From positions 124,001 through 188,000 of the forward strand of contig NIVC01002792.1 in NCBI GenBank assembly GCA_002269645.1: a stretch of 64,000 nucleotides of DNA, read 5' to 3'. The notes beneath the pieces are model-generated. The model saw only the letters and a program-made list of their open reading frames with translations. It made no database searches and had not been told where the DNA came from. Shown here piece by piece: positions 1 to 32,800 of this stretch (position 1 is its first letter; the number at the start of each line of letters is the position of its first letter). Source of the stretch: Macrostomum lignano (lineage: Eukaryota). The translations under genes were made by a program, and so were the position numbers.

Positions 1-1829
1 GCCACCGCCGGCGCCAGGCCACCAGCAAGGCGGCGCAGAATGCAGACCACAGATTCGGGACAAAGCCGCGATGGGCCGCAGGGTCGTTCACCAGCCGCCG
101 CAGGTGGTCAGGCTCGAGCGCAGTCGCCTGCTTGGTCCGAAGCCCCAGGAAGAGCCGAGCGCCCCTCGCAAGGAACTGCAGCCGTGCCGCCTCTCGAGCT
201 AGGTCTGGCGAGCCGGCCAGCTGGTGGAGCACCGAGACGGAATTGATGATGGACCGCTGGGCTAAGAAGGCGTTGATCCGTGATTGCACCAGGTGAACCA
301 ACGTACTGACACAGGTCGCTCTCGCTGGCGGTGGTCGGACCGATGCCCGCCCGATCACAGAACGCATGCCAGGCCTTGAATTGGCAACGGCAGGATCTCC
401 AGGAGCTGTCTGCGAGAGCAAGGCGGCAGCGGAGACTGCTTTCTGGGGCGGCCCGTCCCGAGAGCGGAGGCGACCTGAAAGCGGAGGGCGGAGTGAGAAG
501 ACACCGAGAGCGCGTGCATGGAAAAATTTGTCAGGCAAAAGGCAGATATGACCGTAAAAACAAAAGCAAAAGTTAAGCAATCCAGCACGAGAGCCAAGCA
601 TATGAGACGCGGCGTCACGTCTCATATTTTTATAATTTTCATAAGTCCTGGCAGGTGATAAGCCTCAATACAAAGAGGTTGGGATGACTGCAGAACAAGT
701 GATTAACCATGCTAACAGCGGCGGTACTATTAGACCAGAATCGAGCCAAACTTCGAAACCGTCAACAGTAGAGTCATGGCTTCCTTGAAGTTAATGTGTA
801 AATTCATTAACTGGCCATCAAAGTCTCTCTCCCAATGGATTTAGACCCAGTCAGAGACGGTTGAGGTCCTCAGAATGCCTGCCGCACCTTCGGTGCAGCT
901 GTCAGACTCAATCGCTGCAAGCTCTGGTACGAGCGTAGTTTGGCCAGAGACTACTAAGCGGCAACCAGGCCAGCGCTTTCTGCCATCAATCTAGGTGCAT
1001 TTTCAGCTCAGACCTAAGCACAATTGGAGCCTTGTAGTCATAATCCATTGAGGTGATCACCTTCATGAAGGAAATGCCGCAGCTGACAATTTATTTGACA
1101 CAGCCAACCGAGCTTCCTCGACAGCTTCTGCATGCGACCGCAGTCCCTCAGTAGGTTGTCGATCTCACTGGCTTTGACAGCAGGAAGGCTCATCGTACCC
1201 TTGCGTGTATCGATGCCTATTCCCAGAAAAGCCAGCTGTTGCACAGGTTGAGTCGACTCAACCTGTTAATAGTAAGTTAAAAACTCCAGTTAATAGTAAG
1301 TCCCAGCGGCTGCAGCAGATTAGTCAGAAAAATCATAGGCCCGCCGGGCCCCGCTCTCCGAGTCAACTGCCATTGTCAAATCGTCCAGGTAGTTGACGGT
1401 GGTGTGAAAACCGCACCGCACCATGTAGCGCTTCACCGCTGATGAGAGCCGATGAAAAATCTCACAGGAGGCGCACGAACCGAAAGGCAGCCTGGTGTCG
1501 AACATCGCAGTCTCGCAGTCCTGACCGTGAAAGCGCCACTTCAAGCCAGAAAGACGATGGTCATTGGGACTGATGGCGACGGACCTGTAGGCATCTTTCA
1601 GATCCATTTTGGCCATGTAGGAACCGGGCTTTAAATGCTTTTTGAATTCTCGAACAGAGCCAAAACGGATGCCTATTTCCTGCTGATAGTAGTCATTAAC
1701 AGAGTCGCCGAGCGGAGCAGACAGATCGTGAATGAGGCGGACTTTCCCGTTGGATTCAGGCAAGGACTCAATGGGGTTTACTTTCACAGGCTCCTTGGGT
1801 AACGGTGTAGCGGCCCGCTGAGCTTTCAC
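1..1829 (-). mobile_element. Decayed Ngaro/DIRS-type tyrosine-recombinase retrotransposon (RT-RNase H-YR), runs off the window start
   Basis: Minus strand. RT at 1829-1040: VRLIHDLSAP..SVND, MAKMDLKDAYR, LPFG, NYLDD, then LAFLGIGIDT. RNase H-like remnants at ~1000-700: IESDSCTEGAAG, IHWERDF, LHINFKEA. YR N-terminal-like segment at ~400-1: FKAWHAFC..ASESDLCQYV, SVLHQLAG..RLQFLARG. Multiple frameshifts and stops. Confidence 0.8.
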
Positions 1830-1989
1830 CTTGGCGGCATTCTGGCTAGAATATTTAGTTATCTCTCAGAGCAGTAATATTAGGTTGCTTATCTTTAACC
1901 AAACGAAAGCCATGAACGATACCATTCATCAAATACTGCTTGTCTGGGTCGTAATTCAGCAGCTTCTCCCAAGCGAAGCCTTCAAATCT

Positions 1990-8527: not shown

Positions 8528-23668
<15,141 letters not shown>

Positions 23669-23756
23669 GCTGCTGATAGTGCTGCTTCCGTAGCTCAACG
23701 CTGCTCTTCGCTCGGGTTTTCCCTGTCACTTTTTAACCCGCGCGTTGCAAAGCTGG

Positions 23757-23864
23757 CCTGATTGGCCCGCTAATTATCTGAGCAGCGATTGGTCGCAGCA
23801 GCCAGTCAGCAGCAGCAGCAACAGGGCTGCAGCGTGTCATTCAGTTGAAAAAAAAAAAAAAAAA
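23757..23864 (-). promoter_or_regulatory. Upstream region of sGC: T-tract plus orphan 3' splice acceptor (candidate trans-splice site) and two CCAAT boxes
   Basis: Minus strand reads T17-18 (about 23864-23847) CAACTGAATGACACGCTGCAG|, AG at 23828-23827. ATTGG motifs at ~23761 and ~23789. Confidence 0.45.
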
Positions 23865-24106
23865 ACTGATTTGAAAATTGAGCCAGCCGGAGCTCATTAA
23901 TTTTCCCGCCAGCAGCCAGCATGGAAACGGCGACAGGAAATCGAGGAAGCGGAAAGCTGGATTTTAATTTCAGCAGTGAGCACCCTCTCAGTTCATGGAC
24001 AAGCAGCCCTTCCCAGGCCGCAACAAACAAATCAAGACTTCTGATCGATTGCCTGCATAGCTTTGATAAATTAGCCAATGCGGGTTAAATGTTCAAGTAT
24101 AATCGA

Positions 24107-24112
24107 TTTATT
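24107..24112 (-). promoter_or_regulatory. Candidate poly(A) signal of the Prx-like gene
   Basis: AATAAA on the minus strand about 215 nt after the stop codon. Confidence 0.55.
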
Positions 24113-24327
24113 TAGTTATACTACTCGAACCATCTTTAATGATGGCTAGCAGGTAACTGTTGCATGCAGCACTGTATGACTCAAAGGTTATTAAAGGCAA
24201 AAGCTTACGAAATAAAATTGCCTGATTCGAATGCATAGAATTTGGCCCTATACTACGTGTAGCTAAAATGCGAGCGGTGTTTCCAGAGTTTTCCATCCGA
24301 CAGTCGAGTCCAAGCTGCAGCCCGGCA

Positions 24328-27141
24328 TCACTTGTTGTCCCCGCTCTCCGCCGCCTCGGTGGGATATTTCTCCCGGAAGTAGGCCCGGCTGGCCTCCGGG
24401 TCGGGCGCCAGGCCGGCGTCCCCCGAGTTCCAGTCGGCCGGGCAGACCTCGCCGTGCTCGTCGGTGAACCGGAAGGCCGTCAGCTGGCGGTACAGCTCGC
24501 CGACGCTGCGGGACACCTGCGGGCAGGCGATGAAGGGTGCCCGAGGGTCAGGGTGCACCGACCCGCATCCGGGATACATTTCCCATTCTTGGTTCGGAAA
24601 GTCCCCATGCAGATAAAGATCCGCCAATCAAGGCGAACCACGAACTCTCACAATCGCACGAGCTGTCTGCAATTTCCTTGGGTAGCCGATCAACCTTCAA
24701 GTAGCCCCGGCCAATTTAATAGATTAATCATTTAACAACAATGAATGACTGAGGCCACTGTTGAACCGTTCGATTTGGCAAATTAATGCAAATTTAGCGA
24801 GTCTATAGAAACAGAGAACGCTCGGGTGCCCACGCAAGATGAAGCTTGAAGCGACGAGCCATGCAATGCACTGAGGGAGGCCCTGCAATATCAGCAAATC
24901 CGAGACAACGGCAAGCCTAATCAAGCAGAGCAGGAAGAGTTACCTAGGCTACGGGGTTGTAGCCTAGTCGTTAGAGCATTGGACTCACGATTGAAGGGTC
25001 GGGGGTTCGATTCCCAATCCCACTGGAACAATTTGCGTCCTTGCATTTAACTCTGCATTGCTTCAGTTCACCCAGCGGTAGAATGGGTGCCGGCATAAGC
25101 TGGGGTAATTGAGGATGTGTGTGGCGACCCTCTAATCTGTGGACTGAACAGCCGCACGCAGCCTTCAGATGCGCCTCGCGCTAGCTGCGGCTGAGCTGTC
25201 GGTTGCACATCTGCCCATTAGGGCAGGCGTAATTATTTATAAAAATAATTATTCCTAAATAAATGTACTCCTTCATCTACATTCAAGAGTTGGCAATAGT
25301 TCACAAAACATATTTTTTAATTCTGCCAAAGCATTTACCAGCAAACAGTGCAAGTCGTAAATAACATATTTTTTCGGCAAGTGCAAAAATATATGAATCA
25401 TTTTTTATTCTGCGCAGAGACGAAGGCGGTGAGATGAAAAGCACCAACGGCTCAGGTGAGCCCCGAGTGCTGATCAACAGTAAACACCGGCTTTGCAATC
25501 GAATTTCTTTGACAAGCTGCAAGGGGATTAGCAGGCGGCAGTCAGGAAATAATGCAGTGATCGCCGTCAGGCATTTTCCCGAATTCAAGAGCTGCAGCGG
25601 CCTGAAGCTGCAACTCAAAGGCCTCTGTTTGTTTTGCTGATACTGGACAGACTGCAAAACCTTCCGGACAAAAGCTGCCATATCCGATTGCAGAAAACTA
25701 TACGGGTCAACAACTGACGGAGAGGCGTTCCACTTGAGCTTGGAGCAATTTATACAGAAGGCTGGGTAAACACAGGCGTTTATGGCCTTTCAAATGCCAA
25801 AGCATTGCTTCAAGACTGCGCGCAACCTTGAAAACGGAAAATAAAAAGCCCCACAAAGTCTCCTTGCGAAAGAGTGTAATCATGCCAAGAAAGTGCTGTG
25901 TTGCAGGATGCAGCCCTAATTATGTCATCAAAGAAAGGTGCATGCATTGTCTTATGTCTTCCCGAAAGAGGCCAAATGGCCCGGCCGACGCAAGTTACGT
26001 AAATAGCCCAAGCCGACTGTCTGACCGTTTGAAAGCAGCTTCTGCTCGCCCCGTTTCTATAAAAAGCTGTCGATTTTGTTTGTCGTAACGTTTGAATGAA
26101 TAAACTTGTTAACGTGACAGCATGCAGCTTCAGTTTAACTTTGTCAGCCTGGATGCATCAGTGATGTCTTACATGAAAGTCCAGGCCTCGAGATAAAAAA
26201 TTACACAAGACGTCATGCACTCTCGTAGCTCCTCACGCCCCAAAGCACCTTTGAACTGAATCTGGGTGACAATTGGCCATCCAGTTTCTTTCTCTTCTGG
26301 AGCGCTGATTGGCTGAATGGAAACTGCCCACTGTACATGTTCGCATAAGCACCGGTTTCCTTTCTACCCTCCGCTCCACCAACTCTGAGCGTAAACGACC
26401 GTTTACCGTATTTGGGACCCTGAGCTCTGTTCTTAATCTTACGTTTTTTTCAGTTTTGCAAGCGTCCCTGCTAATTCCCAGGGCCCCTTCCCTGCATGTC
26501 CGCCTCTGCTAAGCATGGAGAGTAGCTACAACCTTCGAGTTACTGGAGCCCAAGTTCAGTGGCGCTCTTGTGCAACCATAAAAGTCTCAAACTTTCGTCC
26601 GCAAAGTCGCTCGCAAGCCCCTCACCATGGCATCGTTGATGGTGAGCTGGCGCACCACCCCCTTGTCGTCAAGAATGACGTGGGCTCGGTGCAGCAGCTC
26701 CGCCTTGGCGTTCCACACACCGGCGAAGTGGCAGCTGAACCGGCCGGCGCCATCGCAGATGACGGGGAACGGCAGTTCCTGCAGGCCGCCGCGGCTGGCC
26801 GGCGTGTCCATCCAGCGCTGCACCTGGTCGACGCTGGCGTCCACCACGCCGACAACGTAAGTCTTGTGCTGATCGTGCAGCTCCTTGACCATGTCCGCTG
26901 AGACGGCGTGAAACTCATCGAAAAGGTCGCTGCCAGAGTCGGACAGGCGGTCGACGGCCGGGCCGTGGGTCGGCAGGAACAGCAGCAGGAGGTAGCTGTG
27001 CGACAGGCGGTAGGTGCGAAGGCTCACCTCCTGGAGACTGCCGCCGGCAACCGCGACTGCGGTGGCGTCTTCCGGGGCGACTTGGCCAACCGAGACGGGC
27101 TGGCTGGAGCTGCCGCTGGCCGGTTTGCGATAATTCGACAT
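24328..27141 (-). CDS. Peroxiredoxin-like protein (Prx1/AhpC fold) lacking the peroxidatic Cys, 234 aa, 2 exons
   Basis: complement join(27141-26626,24516-24328), ATG|GTGAGG..CGCAG|GTG. Collinear with typical 2-Cys Prx: VGQVAPE, WMDTP..GGL, HRAHVILDDKGVVRQLTIND, VSRSVGE, AFRFTDEHGEVCPADW, SRAYF. Confidence 0.88.
24953..25250 (+). mobile_element. tRNA-derived SINE in the Prx-like intron
   Basis: A box TAGCCTAGTCGTTAG, B box GGTTCGATTCC, poorly paired acceptor stem, SINE-like body TTCAGTTCACCCAGCGGTAGAATGGGTGCC, AT-rich tail. Confidence 0.65.
25881..26090 (+). pseudogene. THAP-domain relic (probable DNA-transposon remnant)
   Basis: MPRKCCVAGCSPNY, then in a shifted frame YVFPKE..W and CSPRF (CxxHF-like). 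Frameshifted with stops. Confidence 0.4.
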
Positions 27142-29179: not shown

Positions 29180-29505
29180 ACCCGATTACGGGCGATTCTT
29201 CTGATGTTCTCGTGGCGGATTACGGGCGATTCTTCTGATGTTCTCGTGGTGGATTAGGGGCGATTCTTCTGATGTTCTCATGGCGGATTAGGGGCGATTC
29301 TTCTGATGTTCTCGTGGCGGATTAGGGGCGATTCTTCTGATGTTCTCGTGGCGGATTAGGGGCGATTCTTCTGATGTTCTCGTGGCGGATTAGGGGCGAT
29401 TCTTCTGATGTTCTCATGGCGGATTAGGGGCGATTCTTCTGATGTTCTCATGGCGGATTAGGGGCGATTCTTTTGATGTTCTCGTGGCGGATTAGGGGCG
29501 ATTTT
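29180..29505. repeat. 34-bp minisatellite downstream of RPL19
   Basis: GGATTAGGGGCGATTCTTCTGATGTTCTC[G/A]TGGC, about 9 copies. Confidence 0.95.
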
Positions 29506-29840: not shown

Positions 29841-32800
29841 TCACTCCAGGACCTCCGCTCGCTTCTGCGCCACGCGCTCCTGGCGCCGCTTCCTGGCCTC
29901 CCTGGCGCGGGTCCGCCTGGCCTCGGCCTGGTCCATAAGCTGCTTAGTGCGAGCCCGCTCCGCCTTCTTCCTGTGGATGTGCTCAACCAGGACGCGCTTG
30001 TTCTTGAATCCGTTGCCCTTGCAGCTCATGTACAGCTGGTGGTACAGGTGCTTGTCGAGCTTCTTGGCCTCGCGGTAGCGCTTGAGCAGGCGGCGAAGGA
30101 CGCGCATGCGGCGCATCCAGAGCACCTTCTCGGGCATGCGGGCGTTAGCCGTGCCCTTGCGCTTGCCCTGGCCCATGTGGCGGCCCTTGCGCCTGGCGAT
30201 CAGGTTCTTGCGGCAGCGGGCGCGCGAGTGGACAGCTACCGGCTTGCGGATGATCAGGCCGTCCTTGACGAGCTTGCGGATGTTCTGCCGGCTGTTGGCA
30301 TTGGCGATTTCGCTGTTCTCGTTGGGGTCCAGCCAGATCTTAGCTTTGCCGCACTTGAGAACCGCGGCGGCCAGGCGCTTCTGTAGGCGCAGGTTGCTAG
30401 GTGGTGGAGAGGGCAGGGGCGATTGGGAATGAGGATTAATATGATTGCAGCCTGAATTACAGTGGCATTTGCGATCTTGAGTACAGTGTTGAACAATAAA
30501 ACAGAATACAACAATATATAAAAATAAGATATAATTTAATTTACAAACCAGCCAGTGTTTTTGTCTATCAGCTATGCTAGCCTATAGTGCAAGACCTTCA
30601 CTATAGCAAAGCACTAAATTAGATACCAAAAGTACCAAGCATAAGATACAATAGAATAAAAAATTTGCAGCCATAGCTAAAACCAAAAGTACAGCAAAGC
30701 TTTTGAGTATTTTTGAAATCATATCCTATGATTTTATCCTAGCTTGGAAAGAAGTTTGAATTTATAATTTATAATATTTTGATATAGTAAACCTAAACTA
30801 CAAAACATGAAAATGTAATCTTTTTCAGTTACAGAGTGGCCTAAAGAGCTTTTTAAGAATCTGGGCAGTGTGGTAATTACTGTTTTAGCAGCTGTTTCTT
30901 GTTAGTTATATTATCATTATATACAGTCTATTATGCATACTAGAACAAAAATCTATATTAGGCAAATAAATGCCTGTTTATGCAAAAAACAGAACAATTC
31001 CTTAAAACACTGTATATGCAAAAATCTCTTAAAGGAAATCAGCTGACTTTTTTATGAGAACAAAACTAAATGAACTCTTGGCTAGGTGAATCCCAAGGTT
31101 GCACATGTATGTGCACAAGCTTAGGAATCACCTGATTATTTCTATTGGCAACATGCACATGTAAGTTGCAATTGGTTAAGAGTAATCATGTGACTACCAA
31201 CTATTTTGTCCAATAGTAGCATGTTAATTTAGATTATATAATAAGACACACACAGAGTTTTGATTTTTATAGGTTGAGATTTTTGTTAGCTTTAGTAGAC
31301 TGAATACTAACTAAATAAGAAATCGATTGTCAAAACTGCTTTGTGTGACTTTTACTTTAATTGACTTGATTTGAATGTTGAATTACAAGTGCTATAATTC
31401 ATATTATTGAAACAAAAAAGAGCTAGCCTAGAAGTGAACATACATGCGCAACAGTCGGCCGAGTCAGCCGATCTGGCTGACTGATTTGGCGGCCAACCAA
31501 GGAAGTCGCAAAAATGCCCACCCGAAAAATACCGAAGTATTGGTACTAAGTAGCTGACGAGGCATTTTGACTTAATAAGACAGTCATAGTTACTCCTGCC
31601 GTTTACCCAAAGTTGCCTTAATTTTGCGTTAGGGTTTTTTACATGTAAGTTGCATTTTTGACCAAAAACTATGTCGCATTTTTGTTAAAACTAAGTCGCA
31701 TGGCCGACCGAATTTTAGAGGCTGCGCATGTATGGAAGGGAATAGATTGAACTGCTAATGTAGCAAAATAGCAATGCAGATTTGAATACTAAGGGAAACT
31801 TGCTATAGGAGGAATGCTAGCTATCTGGGGTTGCTTGCTTTATATAAGGGTTGTTTGCTTTTGGGGATGCTTGTTTGGGAGAATTGCTCAAATGTCGAGA
31901 CTTACTAAAATAATAACCTGAATAACTGAGATATCAAGGCTTACTAGAGAAATTGCTAAGATACTCTCCGAATTTCCCTTTGTAATATTTTCCCAATCCC
32001 TTCTCTTCGTAAGTTTCTGAGCACTGTCACTCCCTTTTCCTTAAAATAACTAACTCAACAAGATTTCAAAGTTTATCTGAGAATATAGAACGAACCAATA
32101 TTATAGCGCACGAATATTTCAAGAGCAAAAAAAGGTTACTTTTATTTGGCAAAAATCACTCGTATATATACTGTTTTAGATGGCTATGTTTATAACAAAA
32201 ATATTTATCGATAATATTTTGCGTGGTAAAACAAATGCTAAAATTAGTTTCTAGTTTGCGCGCGAATTTAACATGGTTATAAATCAGCTAATTTACATGT
32301 ATGAATCGTAATAGGCATTTTATTAGGCACAAAGAATAGTAAAGGTAATTAACAGAAACATACACTAGCACATATATAAAACTAAACACAAACAACTGCA
32401 CAATCTTAGCTATAGGGATAAGCTAAACATTATTGACATGGATCTATGTGGATAAAATTGGAATTATTGACATGGCCTATAGACTTGAATGGTACAGTGG
32501 CAGCTATTATAATAAGCTGCCATGGGGATAACCTAGAAATTATCGACATGGATCCATGTGGATAAAATTATAATTATTGACATAGCCTATAGACCTGAAT
32601 GGTGGCAGCTATTTCAAAAAGCTGCTGTGGGGATAAGCTGGAAATTATCAACATGTATACGTATAGATAAAATTGGAATTATTAGTATGGGACTGGCTTG
32701 CTAAGGGAATTGCAAAAATGTCAAGTCTTAAAGAGTCTTAGGGTGGGAATAGCTGATGTCGGGCTTTAAATTGCTTAGATTTCAAGGCTTAAGCTACTTG

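What the first reader, a model, noticed from the sequence alone, without database searches (positions are those of the whole stretch)
23668..27141. Candidate redox/O2-sensing module: Cys-less peroxiredoxin in operon-like tandem with an O2-type cyclase
Seen: same strand, Prx stop 660 bp from the sGC ATG. The spacer reads, in order, AATAAA (24112-24107), a long T tract (~23864-23847) and an orphan acceptor CTGCAG| (23827) with no upstream exon found. Known: this order resembles SL trans-spliced operon spacers, and trans-splicing occurs in flatworms. Inference: a non-catalytic Prx may be co-expressed as a redox adaptor or chaperone for the heme/O2 cyclase. I know of no described pairing like this. 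Counter-evidence: CCAAT boxes at 23757-23795 could be an independent sGC promoter.
Basis: inference. Interest (0 to 1): 0.72.

Follow-up and report, generated by a model that had tools for sequence, protein, structure and literature searches.

The report
Dead peroxiredoxin beside oxygen-type guanylate cyclase
In the flatworm Macrostomum lignano, a peroxiredoxin-like gene that has lost its catalytic cysteine lies 659 bp upstream of an intact oxygen-type soluble guanylate cyclase gene; the sequence cannot show whether they share a transcript, and nothing links their functions.

Summary
The window is Macrostomum lignano contig NIVC01002792.1. All reported motifs are present on the minus strand.

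**Corrections**
- The peroxiredoxin is not Cys-less. Its peroxidatic Cys is replaced by Asp and its active-site Thr by Pro. The catalytic Arg, the resolving Cys (EVCPADW) and two other Cys remain.
- It is a lineage-restricted, well-folding pseudo-peroxiredoxin.

**The cyclase**
- I rebuilt it as an intact 11-exon Gyc-88E/GCY-31-type gene with complete HNOB, HNOBA and cyclase domains, the heme His, YxSxR and a distal Tyr.

**Operon reading**
- It is unproven. That motif occurs at chance frequency in the spacer, and the candidate acceptor has a poorer proximal pyrimidine tract than all ten confirmed acceptors.
- Two NF-Y-type CCAAT boxes and a TATA-like element lie between the acceptor and the ATG.
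- The deposited (NCBI) gene calls include the peroxiredoxin in all three locus copies but never the cyclase.

**Other**
- UniProt A0A1I8GK59 fuses the two genes through an implausible intron.
- No evidence supports a functional module.
- I favour two neighbouring genes with separate promoters (about 0.5) over an operon (about 0.3). Interest is low to moderate.

The parts
26626..27141 (-). Prx-like gene, coding exon 1 (172 codons). It contains the degenerate active site LPTHGPAVDRLS and a 12-aa insertion, ADMVKELHDQHK.
   Evidence: Translation. The spliced product is identical to PAA55184.1/P0057. Alignments to PDB Prx1/2 and to 21 homologues are.
24517..26625 (-). Prx-like intron (GTGAGG...CCGCAG, 2109 nt). 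It holds a tRNA-like element on the + strand at 24953-25022.
24328..24516 (-). Prx-like coding exon 2 with the stop codon. It encodes VSRSVGE...HGEVCPADW (resolving Cys kept) and the 1-cysPrx_C domain.
24204..24208 (-). Donor-like GTAAG in the Prx 3'UTR, about 380 nt upstream of the candidate acceptor. It occurs at chance frequency.
   Evidence: 0.77 expected in the spacer, 1 found.
24107..24112 (-). AATAAA, the likely poly(A) signal of the Prx-like gene, 216 nt after the stop. It is identical in all three locus copies.
23848..23865 (-). T18 tract, the only homopolymer of 10 or more in the window. The two other copies carry T8CTGT3-4 at this position.
23827..23832 (-). CTGCAG, the candidate 3' splice or trans-splice acceptor, with the first exon base at 23826. 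It fits the published [T/C]TNCAG motif but has a weak proximal pyrimidine tract.
23788..23792 (-). Distal CCAAT box (GACCAATCG).
23761..23765 (-). Proximal CCAAT box (GGCCAATCAGG), 27 bp from the first.
23729..23736 (-). TTAAAAAG, a TATA-like element about 25 bp downstream of the proximal CCAAT box and about 60 bp upstream of the ATG. It implies a TSS near 23705 (inference).
23343..23668 (-). sGC coding exon 1, the N-terminal two thirds of the H-NOX domain from MYGLILD to LHEYL(R).
8937..17299 (-). sGC coding exons 2-11: 17299-16828, 16656-16530, 16445-16322, 16253-16124, 12968-12822, 12742-12596, 11516-11360, 10832-10723, 9650-9561 and 9489 to about 8937. The C-terminal tail is uncertain. All introns are GT..AG.
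   Evidence: Pfam on the 794-aa model gives HNOB 6e-43, HNOBA 2.6e-61 and Guanylate_cyc 2.1e-52, all essentially full length.

Best explanation
Two intact, separately recognisable genes of Macrostomum lignano lie head-to-tail on the minus strand.

(1) The Prx-like gene is a lineage-restricted, strongly diverged paralogue of typical 2-Cys peroxiredoxins.
- The peroxidatic Cys is replaced by Asp and the active-site Thr by Pro, so it cannot reduce peroxides by the Prx mechanism.
- The fold, the catalytic Arg, the C-terminal resolving Cys and the YF motif are kept.
- My inference is that it acts, if at all, as an oligomeric holdase or scaffold. This follows the engineered Cys-to-Asp 'hyperoxidised mimic' of plant 2-Cys Prx, which lacks peroxidase activity but is a constitutive chaperone.

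(2) The cyclase is an 11-exon Gyc-88E/GCY-31-type soluble guanylate cyclase with complete H-NOX, HNOBA and cyclase domains. It is most likely a homodimeric O2-modulated sensor, inferred from family membership.

The 659-bp spacer carries the Prx poly(A) signal. Immediately upstream of the cyclase ATG it carries a conventional promoter-like cluster: two NF-Y-type CCAAT boxes 27 bp apart, followed by TTAAAAAG. I consider it most likely that the cyclase is transcribed from this promoter of its own, and that the T-tract/CTGCAG upstream is not used. On this view the adjacency is a neighbour relation with no dedicated functional coupling. An ab initio predictor has already mistaken the pair for one gene (UniProt A0A1I8GK59).

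Shown: gene structures, residue changes and motif positions. Inferred: promoter use, absence of co-transcription and all biochemical roles.
For: Species and locus:
- P0001/P0057 are M. lignano BOX15_Mlig020987 proteins.
- L003 matches window 37141-14328 at 100%.

Prx-like gene:
- Pfam gives AhpC-TSA plus 1-cysPrx_C. The best PDB hits are Prx1/2 at 6e-28.
- Asp aligns at the peroxidatic Cys and Pro at the Thr; the Arg and VCP are kept.
- Exhaustive HMMER over 1.84 billion representatives finds only its own cluster below 1e-30. The next hits are at most 43% identical.
- The AF2 model has pLDDT 84.3 and pTM 0.81. Only residues 1-3 and 61-70, the former active-site loop, fall below 50.
- The coding sequence differs less between copies (0.2-1.1% substitutions, no indels inside the two coding-exon segments, one in-frame 3-nt insertion next to the ATG in L001). 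Flanking non-coding DNA shows 1.2-4.7% substitutions and many indels.
- Engineered Cys-to-Asp At2-CysPrx is chaperone-active and oligomeric (PMC3733160).

Cyclase:
- The 794-aa model has three full-length Pfam domains.
- Most of the 120 best hits that carry a name, including most of the top-ranked ones, are 'soluble guanylate cyclase 88E(-like)' or 'gcy-31-like'.
- His105, YxSxR and Tyr144 are conserved; Tyr144 aligns to Met144 of Nostoc H-NOX.

Promoter reading:
- Two CCAAT boxes lie within 127 nt of the ATG against about 0.11 expected. Both fit RRCCAATSR (consensus from my own knowledge). TTAAAAAG follows them.
- All are identical in three copies.
- The candidate acceptor is weaker than all 10 confirmed acceptors, and its motif is at chance frequency.
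- The NCBI gene calls include RPL19 and the Prx in all three copies but nothing in the 10 kb downstream.
- No M. lignano NCBI protein matches the cyclase.
Against: - In M. lignano, 45% of conserved genes are SL trans-spliced. A same-strand neighbour under 1 kb away is the published operon criterion. A 659-bp gap is short for a genome averaging about 10 kb per gene, which on its own favours an operon.
- CTGCAG fits the published trans-acceptor motif exactly and follows a pyrimidine tract in all three copies.
- CCAAT and TATA-like elements are consensus matches only. No TSS data were available.
- Absence of the cyclase from the deposited gene calls may reflect only low expression in a few neurons.
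- The chaperone role is extrapolated from an engineered plant protein. Here the Thr is also lost, and a 12-aa insertion and a low-confidence loop replace the active site.
Confidence: 0.5

Rival explanations
1. SL-resolved two-gene operon. Transcription starts upstream of the Prx-like gene and reads through its poly(A) site. The cyclase mRNA is released by trans-splicing of the 35-nt M. lignano spliced leader to the acceptor at 23827|23826. The two genes are therefore co-transcribed, though not necessarily functionally linked.
For: - M. lignano has 30% of genes trans-spliced (45% of conserved genes) and 15% in operons, of which 75% are two-gene operons. The operon threshold is 1 kb and the acceptor motif is [T/C]TNCAG (PMC8629364).
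- Almost 7% of assembled transcripts (transcriptional units) are multi-gene precursors (PMC5730564).
- The order in the spacer is AATAAA, about 240 nt, a pyrimidine tract, 20 nt, then CTGCAG. The pyrimidine tract, AATAAA and CTGCAG are present in all three copies.
- The gap from AATAAA to the acceptor is about 280 nt, within the published range.
Against: - No SL or read-through evidence could be obtained.
- The motif is at chance frequency (2 found, 2.4 expected).
- The proximal pyrimidine content is below all 10 confirmed acceptors.
- The resulting 158-nt 5'UTR would contain two CCAAT boxes and a TATA-like element. The SL's terminal AUG would open the out-of-frame uORF MPCCCCC* (read).
- The cyclase is absent from the deposited gene calls that include the Prx three times.
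- Published SL-trans-spliced genes are enriched in neoblast and conserved housekeeping genes, not sensory genes.
Confidence: 0.3
2. Dedicated redox/O2 module. The non-catalytic Prx-like protein is co-expressed with the cyclase and binds or chaperones it. It might use its remaining resolving Cys or its Asp-mimicked 'hyperoxidised' conformation, coupling peroxide or redox state to O2/cGMP signalling.
For: - The only direct evidence is adjacency on one strand, kept in three copies.
- There are precedents that thioredoxin-fold proteins modulate guanylate-cyclase-dependent gas sensing. One is TRX-1 in C. elegans ASJ (PMC6066330). Thioredoxin-1 and PDI binding to mammalian sGC is from my own knowledge.
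- Cys-to-Asp Prx is chaperone-active.
Against: - The three copies are 95-99% identical duplicates within one genome, so nothing is known about evolutionary conservation of the pairing.
- No orthologue of the Prx-like protein was found outside M. lignano, whereas the cyclase family is pan-metazoan. The cyclase therefore works without such a partner elsewhere.
- No literature on such a pairing was found.
- Operon membership in animals does not predict shared function (established knowledge).
Confidence: 0.06
3. A single fusion protein, Prx domain plus sGC, as in UniProt A0A1I8GK59 (940 aa). It would be made by splicing from a donor just before the Prx stop codon (CAA|GTGATG, 24331) to an acceptor 38 nt upstream of the cyclase ATG (GCGAAG|A, 23706).
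For: A public gene model does exactly this. P0059 joins ...AAESGDNK to [19 protein letters not shown]..., and the junction is GT..AG and in frame (read).
Against: - The donor lacks the +5 G of the species consensus GT[G/A]AG.
- The acceptor is preceded by a purine-rich stretch (GGGAAAACCCGAGCGAAG) with no pyrimidine tract, unlike all confirmed acceptors.
- The model starts without an ATG inside the Prx 5'UTR and mis-frames the coiled-coil exon. These are typical of an ab initio merge.
- NCBI's gene calls end the Prx at its TGA in all three copies.
- The cyclase begins with the canonical MYGL N-terminus.
Confidence: 0.03
4. The acceptor at 23827 is used in cis. The cyclase would have an upstream non-coding first exon or an alternative promoter further 5'. 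For example, the GTAAG at 24208 in the Prx 3'UTR, or a donor beyond the Prx gene, would splice to 23826.
For: A donor-like GTAAG exists 380 nt upstream. CTGCAG plus an upstream pyrimidine tract is a usable 3' splice site. The cyclase's in-frame upstream stop (TGA about 23727) shows that anything spliced on would be 5'UTR only.
Against: GTRAG is at chance frequency (0.77 expected). No transcript evidence exists. The same weaknesses of the acceptor apply as above.
Confidence: 0.08

Closest known systems
Typical 2-Cys peroxiredoxins (Prx1/AhpC subfamily; human PRDX1/2/4, PDB 1QQ2, 2Z9S, 1QMV)
   Same: - AhpC-TSA and 1-cysPrx_C domains are present.
- About 35-43% identity over the C-terminal two thirds.
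- Conserved Arg (HRAHVILD), resolving Cys in HGEVCPADW, a YF motif near the C-terminus and a confident predicted thioredoxin fold.
   Different: - PxxxTxxC is replaced by PTHGPAVD, so there is no peroxidatic Cys and no Thr.
- A 12-residue insertion follows helix alpha2, and GGLG reads GGLQ.
- No close orthologue exists outside M. lignano.
- It therefore fails the defining catalytic feature and should be called Prx-like or a pseudo-peroxiredoxin.
Engineered Cys(P)-to-Asp 2-Cys Prx (Arabidopsis At2-CysPrx C54D, a 'hyperoxidised mimic') and the Cys-independent chaperone function of Leishmania mTXNPx
   Same: There is a negative charge at the peroxidatic position. Those variants lack peroxidase activity but are oligomeric and chaperone-active (PMC3733160; PMC6368585).
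   Different: Here the substitution is natural and is accompanied by loss of the Thr, an insertion and a low-confidence active-site loop. Oligomeric state and holdase activity are untested.
Atypical O2-binding soluble guanylate cyclases (Drosophila Gyc-88E/Gyc-89D, C. elegans GCY-31/33/35/36)
   Same: - The HNOB-HNOBA-cyclase architecture is complete.
- Proximal His, YxSxR and a distal-pocket Tyr are conserved.
- Metal-binding Asp residues, the E/C guanine-specificity pair and the Asn/Arg pair sit in one chain, as expected for a homodimer-competent subunit.
- The best hits are 37-48% identical '88E-like' proteins.
   Different: The last 50 residues of the cyclase domain are unusually divergent ([23 protein letters not shown]...). 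The predicted tail runs into a 31-aa tandem repeat. O2 binding is inferred, not shown.
SL trans-spliced operons of M. lignano (Ustyantsev & Berezikov 2021) and C. elegans SL2 operons
   Same: Same-strand genes lie under 1 kb apart. The upstream AATAAA is followed by a U-rich tract and a YTNCAG acceptor.
   Different: - The modal intercistronic distance is about 100 bp, against about 280 bp here from AATAAA to the acceptor.
- Trans-splicing of the downstream gene is undemonstrated.
- Promoter-like elements sit inside the would-be 5'UTR.
Thioredoxin-fold regulators of guanylate cyclase signalling (C. elegans TRX-1 in ASJ NO sensing; mammalian Trx1/PDI-sGC interactions)
   Same: A small thioredoxin-fold redox protein is conceptually paired with a cyclase-based gas sensor (PMC6066330; the mammalian cases are from my own knowledge).
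   Different: Those partners are catalytically active thiol oxidoreductases, are not encoded next to the cyclase, and were shown genetically or biochemically. Here there is only adjacency.

Membership tests
Typical 2-Cys peroxiredoxin (Prx1/AhpC subfamily) | AhpC-TSA thioredoxin-fold domain plus the C-terminal 1-cysPrx_C domain | tested here: met
   Pfam PF00578 at 38.1 bits (cut-off 26) and PF10417 at 38.8 bits (cut-off 21.1). AF2 pLDDT is 84.3.
Typical 2-Cys peroxiredoxin (Prx1/AhpC subfamily) | PxxxTxxC motif with the peroxidatic cysteine | tested here: not met
   PTHGPAVD aligns to PLDFTFVC in the PDB Prx1 alignments and in a 22-sequence MAFFT alignment, giving Thr to Pro and Cys to Asp.
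Typical 2-Cys peroxiredoxin (Prx1/AhpC subfamily) | Conserved active-site Arg | tested here: met
   R152 (LLHRAHVILD) is a nearly invariant column (90% or more) in alignment A3.
Typical 2-Cys peroxiredoxin (Prx1/AhpC subfamily) | Resolving cysteine in the C-terminal VCP motif | tested here: met
   HGEVCPADW is present; C197 and P198 are invariant columns.
Typical 2-Cys peroxiredoxin (Prx1/AhpC subfamily) | Thiol peroxidase activity | not testable with these tools
   Expected to be absent given the loss of the peroxidatic Cys. This needs a recombinant enzyme assay.
Atypical (Gyc-88E/GCY-31-type) soluble guanylate cyclase | HNOB + HNOBA + class III cyclase domain architecture | tested here: met
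   Pfam on the 794-aa model gives HNOB 1-161/163, HNOBA 2-216/216 and Guanylate_cyc 4-182/183.
Atypical (Gyc-88E/GCY-31-type) soluble guanylate cyclase | Heme ligation residues: proximal His and the YxSxR motif | tested here: met
   H105, Y134 and R138 are invariant, and S136 is present in LLYRSRR, in alignments to Nostoc H-NOX and 88E-like proteins.
Atypical (Gyc-88E/GCY-31-type) soluble guanylate cyclase | Distal-pocket Tyr at the position of Tt H-NOX Tyr140 / beta1 Ile145, associated with O2 binding (position mapping from my own knowledge) | tested here: met
   Y144 aligns to Nostoc Met144 and is invariant among the 88E-like sequences aligned.
Atypical (Gyc-88E/GCY-31-type) soluble guanylate cyclase | Closest relatives are members of that clade rather than alpha/beta1 NO-type subunits | tested here: met
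   Most of the named hits among the best 120, including most of the top-ranked ones, are '88E(-like)' or 'gcy-31-like'. PDB beta1 scores lower than cyanobacterial H-NOX.
Atypical (Gyc-88E/GCY-31-type) soluble guanylate cyclase | O2 binding or O2-modulated cGMP synthesis | not testable with these tools
   Needs spectroscopy of the heme domain and activity assays.
SL trans-spliced operon of M. lignano | Adjacent genes on the same strand with intergenic distance under 1 kb | tested here: met
   659 nt from stop to ATG. The criterion is from PMC8629364.
SL trans-spliced operon of M. lignano | Downstream gene carries the 35-nt SL at its 5' end | not testable with these tools
   No M. lignano transcript data were reachable. 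No cyclase protein or transcript appears in the searched collections, and supplementary tables gave nothing.
SL trans-spliced operon of M. lignano | Acceptor matching [T/C]TNCAG at the outron-exon junction | tested here: inconclusive
   CTGCAG at 23832-23827 fits, but the motif is at chance frequency (2 found, 2.4 expected) and the site scores below confirmed acceptors.
SL trans-spliced operon of M. lignano | Polycistronic precursor spanning both genes | not testable with these tools
   Needs RNA-seq or long reads across 24328-23668.

The most novel reading that the evidence does not exclude
A naturally 'hyperoxidised-mimic' pseudo-peroxiredoxin (Cys(P) to Asp) has been recruited in Macrostomum as a dedicated partner of an O2-sensing soluble guanylate cyclase. 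It would be co-transcribed with the cyclase from an SL-resolved operon and would tune or stabilise the heme sensor according to redox state. That would be a genetically hard-wired peroxide/O2 integration module not described in any animal.
Probability: 0.05. Interest if true: 0.7.

Novelty: new member of a known kind. Interest (0 to 1): 0.25.

Why it matters
**If the neighbour reading is right**
- The finding is ordinary genome content: a diverged pseudo-enzyme paralogue beside a sensory cyclase.
- The practical value lies in annotation. The Prx-like protein should not be named 'thioredoxin-dependent peroxiredoxin'. UniProt A0A1I8GK59 is a merged model. The cyclase, missing from the deposited NCBI gene calls, now has a complete 11-exon model.

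**If the pair is an SL operon**
- It adds one more to thousands in this species.
- Only a demonstrated physical or functional coupling would be notable. It would give a tractable, transgenesis-capable flatworm system for asking how peroxide and O2 signals converge on cGMP.

**Independently of the cyclase**
- A natural Cys-to-Asp 2-Cys Prx is a neat test case for the idea that the hyperoxidised conformation, not the chemistry, carries the chaperone function.

Tried and rejected
1. **Transcript evidence.** I hoped the protein collections would hold M. lignano cyclase proteins whose locus tags would reveal transcriptional-unit membership. Two searches returned nothing above 48% identity. The only public model is the fused UniProt entry, hidden inside the Prx 90% cluster.
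2. **Expression data.** Supplementary tables of four M. lignano papers were searched for Mlig020987; there were no occurrences. The full-text search also returned none.
3. **Conservation of spacer elements.** The three copies differ by only 1-4%, so identity of the motifs says nothing about constraint.
4. **Truncated cyclase.** I briefly suspected a 3'-truncated pseudogene, because tblastn, an HMM of homologue tails and regex scans all failed to find the end of the catalytic domain. Reading three frames by eye found two further exons (9650-9561, 9489-...) with a divergent but alignable tail. Pfam then covered 182 of 183 positions, so the pseudogene idea was rejected.
5. **tRNA in the intron.** ARAGORN found no tRNA, while Rfam gives a weak tRNA match in the Prx intron. 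I treat it as a tRNA-like relic, not part of the finding.
6. **Alternative fusion.** A frame-preserving fusion through the 23827 acceptor was checked by hand. Joining the pre-stop donor to 23826 runs into TAA after 30 codons, so it was rejected.
7. **Unsuitable tools.** The bacterial promoter/terminator scan and the phage, plasmid and E. coli collections do not apply to a flatworm locus and were not used.

Full report
**Where the window comes from.** The spliced Prx-like protein is identical to Macrostomum lignano PAA55184.1 (BOX15_Mlig020987g2). Locus L003, from contig NIVC01002792.1 of assembly GCA_002269645.1, matches window 37141-14328 at 100%. The same assembly holds two more copies of the locus: L001 (NIVC01001389.1) and L002 (NIVC01000319.1). 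They are 95-99% identical to the window, and both have the same order RPL19 > Prx-like > cyclase on one strand. M. lignano is a hidden polyploid whose sequenced line also carries a chromosome duplication (PMC8629364). These three copies are therefore recent duplicates, not independent evolutionary samples.

**Checking the observation.** Everything lies on the minus strand.
- The Prx stop is at 24330-24328 and the cyclase ATG at 23668.
- AATAAA is at 24112-24107, the T18 run at 23865-23848 and CTGCAG at 23832-23827.
- The CCAAT boxes are at 23792-23788 and 23765-23761, all as reported to within a base.
- I add three features: TTAAAAAG at 23736-23729, a donor-like GTAAG at 24208, and a second CTGCAG just after the stop codon.

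Against rates measured over the whole window, only two features stand out.
- [CT]TNCAG occurs twice against 2.4 expected, GTRAG once against 0.77, and AATAAA once against 0.31. None of these is remarkable.
- The T18 is the only homopolymer of 10 or more in 64 kb.
- Two CCAAT boxes fall within 127 nt of the ATG, where about 0.11 are expected.
- In the other two copies the T tract reads T8CTGT3-4. A pyrimidine tract is common to all copies, but its length in the window is a local expansion.

**The peroxiredoxin.**
- Pfam finds AhpC-TSA and 1-cysPrx_C. The best solved relatives are mammalian Prx1/2 at 6e-28.
- In those alignments, and in a 22-sequence MAFFT alignment, the motif YPLDFTFVCPTE is replaced by LPTHGPAVDRLS. 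The peroxidatic Cys is Asp and the Thr is Pro.
- The active-site Arg, the resolving Cys (HGEVCPADW) and a YF motif are retained. There are three Cys in all, so 'Cys-less' is wrong and 'peroxidatic-Cys-less' is right.
- A 12-residue insertion follows.
- An exhaustive HMMER scan of 1.84 billion cluster representatives found only the protein's own cluster below 1e-30. Everything else is a generic 2-Cys Prx at 43% identity or less. This is a fast-evolving, lineage-restricted paralogue.
- Two other hits (P0082, P0140) also lack the peroxidatic Cys, so such losses occur sporadically.
- AlphaFold2 predicts a confident fold (pLDDT 84.3, pTM 0.81). Only residues 1-3 and 61-70, the former active-site loop, fall below 50.
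- Between the copies, the coding exons show 0.2-1.1% substitutions and no indels inside the two coding-exon segments compared (L001 has one in-frame 3-nt insertion next to the ATG). Surrounding non-coding DNA shows 1.2-4.7% substitutions and many indels. This argues, on small numbers, for an expressed and constrained gene. It is called in the deposited NCBI annotation in all three copies.
- An engineered Cys-to-Asp plant 2-Cys Prx mimics the hyperoxidised state: it has no peroxidase activity but is oligomeric and chaperone-active (PMC3733160). That is the best available analogy for what this protein could do. It remains an inference.

**The cyclase.**
- Exon 1 is an H-NOX start.
- I rebuilt the gene as 11 exons from 23668 to about 8937, all introns GT..AG. 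I used the fused UniProt model, full-length homologues and reading of frames.
- The 794-aa product has essentially full-length HNOB, HNOBA and Guanylate_cyc domains.
- It keeps the proximal His, YxSxR and the catalytic Asp, Glu/Cys and Asn/Arg residues.
- It has Tyr at the distal-pocket position, which aligns to Nostoc H-NOX Met144 and is invariant among the 88E-like sequences aligned.
- Most of the 120 best database hits that carry a name, including most of the top-ranked ones, are 'soluble guanylate cyclase 88E(-like)' or 'gcy-31-like'.
- 'O2-type cyclase' is therefore a fair family assignment, although O2 binding itself is untested.
- The extreme C-terminus is uncertain because the reading frame runs into a 31-aa tandem repeat.

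**Operon or not.**
- M. lignano has a 35-nt SL (CGGTCTCTTACTGCGAAGACTCAATTTATTGCATG). Thirty per cent of genes are trans-spliced (45% of conserved ones), and 15% are assigned to operons using a 1-kb threshold. The trans-acceptor motif is [T/C]TNCAG (PMC8629364; PMC5730564).
- The pair meets the distance rule, and CTGCAG fits the motif.
- A 659-bp gap is short for this genome, which raises the prior for an operon.

Several points weigh against it.
- The motif is at chance frequency.
- The candidate acceptor has a pyrimidine fraction of 0.47 at -18..-4. That is lower than all ten confirmed acceptors of these two genes (0.60-0.93). It ranks third of 38 AGs in the spacer on a crude PWM.
- The two CCAAT boxes are 27 bp apart and both fit RRCCAATSR (consensus from my own knowledge). 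With TTAAAAAG they lie between that acceptor and the ATG, in the textbook order and spacing for a promoter with a TSS near 23705.
- If the SL were added at 23826, its terminal AUG would open the out-of-frame uORF MPCCCCC*, and the 5'UTR would be 158 nt.
- The NCBI gene calls, which I take to derive from the transcript-based Mlig_3_7 annotation, include RPL19 and the Prx in all three copies. They call nothing in the 10 kb downstream, and no M. lignano NCBI protein matches the cyclase.

This last point means whole-animal RNA-seq supported the Prx but not the cyclase. That is easier to reconcile with separate promoters, though low expression in a few neurons would also explain it. No RNA data were reachable with the tools, so the question stays open. 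My estimates are:
- independent promoters, about 0.5;
- SL operon, about 0.3;
- cis-spliced 5'UTR exon, about 0.08;
- fusion protein, about 0.03.

**The fused public model.** UniProt A0A1I8GK59 (P0059, 940 aa, 'guanylate cyclase') sits inside the Prx 90% cluster because it contains the whole Prx-like protein joined to the cyclase.
- The join (...GDNK|[16 protein letters not shown]) requires an intron from CAA|GTGATG at 24331 to GCGAAG|A at 23706. The donor lacks the +5 G, and the acceptor has a purine-rich run instead of a pyrimidine tract.
- The model begins without an ATG in the Prx 5'UTR and mis-frames the coiled-coil exon.
- It is most likely an ab initio merge of neighbours. It shows how close and co-oriented the genes are, but it is not evidence for a fusion.

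**Functional coupling.** Nothing beyond adjacency supports a Prx-cyclase module.
- The cyclase family is pan-metazoan, while the Prx-like gene appears confined to M. lignano.
- I found no literature on such a pairing.
- The nearest precedents are thioredoxin-fold proteins that modulate cyclase-based gas sensing, such as TRX-1 in C. elegans ASJ (PMC6066330). Those are active oxidoreductases encoded elsewhere in the genome.

**Verdict.**
- The gene identities are right. The operon is plausible but unproven, and I judge it somewhat less likely than independent transcription. The functional module is speculation.
- Novelty: new members of known kinds, namely a pseudo-peroxiredoxin and an atypical sGC, possibly one more SL operon.
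- Interest is low to moderate. A single look at the species' SL, T-fill and RAMPAGE tracks would settle the transcription question.

Noticed in passing
window 24953-25022 (+ strand), inside the Prx-like intron: There is a tRNA-like sequence antisense to the host gene. Rfam RF00005 scores it 33.7 bits (gathering score 29), but ARAGORN does not call it. It is single-copy in the window, so it is probably a decayed tRNA gene or a tRNA-derived relic.
   Followed up: partly
window 17527-22938 (sGC intron 1): A 5.4-kb tandem array of a 22-bp unit (GATTAAGATACGCCAGGAATCT; 246 copies, 97% matches) inflates intron 1 to 6 kb in this copy. The array is absent from the two other genomic copies (L001, L002), where the flanks are almost contiguous.
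   Followed up: partly
window 13280-16123, 11528-12212, 9677-10710: Very long tetranucleotide microsatellites lie in the sGC introns: (ACAG)n about 2.8 kb, (AGAT)n about 0.7 kb and (TCTA)n about 1 kb. They begin directly at or near splice donors (GTCTGT..., GTGAGTTGGAGTGATAGATAG...). They create huge spurious ORFs and the extreme AT skew seen at 14-16 kb.
   Followed up: no
P0059 = UniProt A0A1I8GK59 (maps to window about 27378-10726, - strand): This public 940-aa 'guanylate cyclase' model merges the Prx-like gene and the cyclase through an implausible stop-skipping intron, and it mis-frames the coiled-coil exon. UniRef also names the Prx-like protein 'thioredoxin-dependent peroxiredoxin' although it lacks the peroxidatic Cys.
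   Followed up: yes
window about 29841-31960 (- strand), upstream of the Prx-like gene: A ribosomal protein L19e gene (186 aa, multi-exon) lies on the same strand, about 2.7 kb upstream of the Prx-like ATG. A 34-bp tandem repeat (29184-29503) sits between them. The distance is too large for the published operon threshold, even after subtracting the repeat.
   Followed up: partly
L002 10027-10032 versus window 27185-27143: Copy L002 has a 43-nt deletion in the Prx-like 5'UTR, which leaves the upstream frame open (…TTARIMSNY…). This explains why NCBI labels PAA85546.1 'partial' with an N-terminal extension; PAA68523.1 (L001 copy) carries the same kind of extension, which I could not reconcile with the L001 sequence. 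Copy L001 instead has a 5-nt deletion and an extra Ser codon after the ATG.
   Followed up: yes
window 8827-9258 (- strand), 3' end of the sGC model: A 31-bp-period tandem repeat (14 copies, 86% matches) is in frame with the last cyclase exon. It would add a repetitive [31 protein letters not shown] tail. Whether this is translated or removed by a further intron is unknown.
   Followed up: no
window 26270-26315 (- strand), inside the Prx-like intron: Two more extended CCAAT motifs (CAGCCAATCAGCG and TGGCCAATTG) lie about 35 bp apart inside the intron. No gene or RNA family was detected downstream of them.
   Followed up: no
window 1323-1865 (- strand): An ORF of 181 aa has a reverse-transcriptase-like sequence (…YLDDL…), indicating a retroelement fragment downstream of the cyclase gene.
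   Followed up: no
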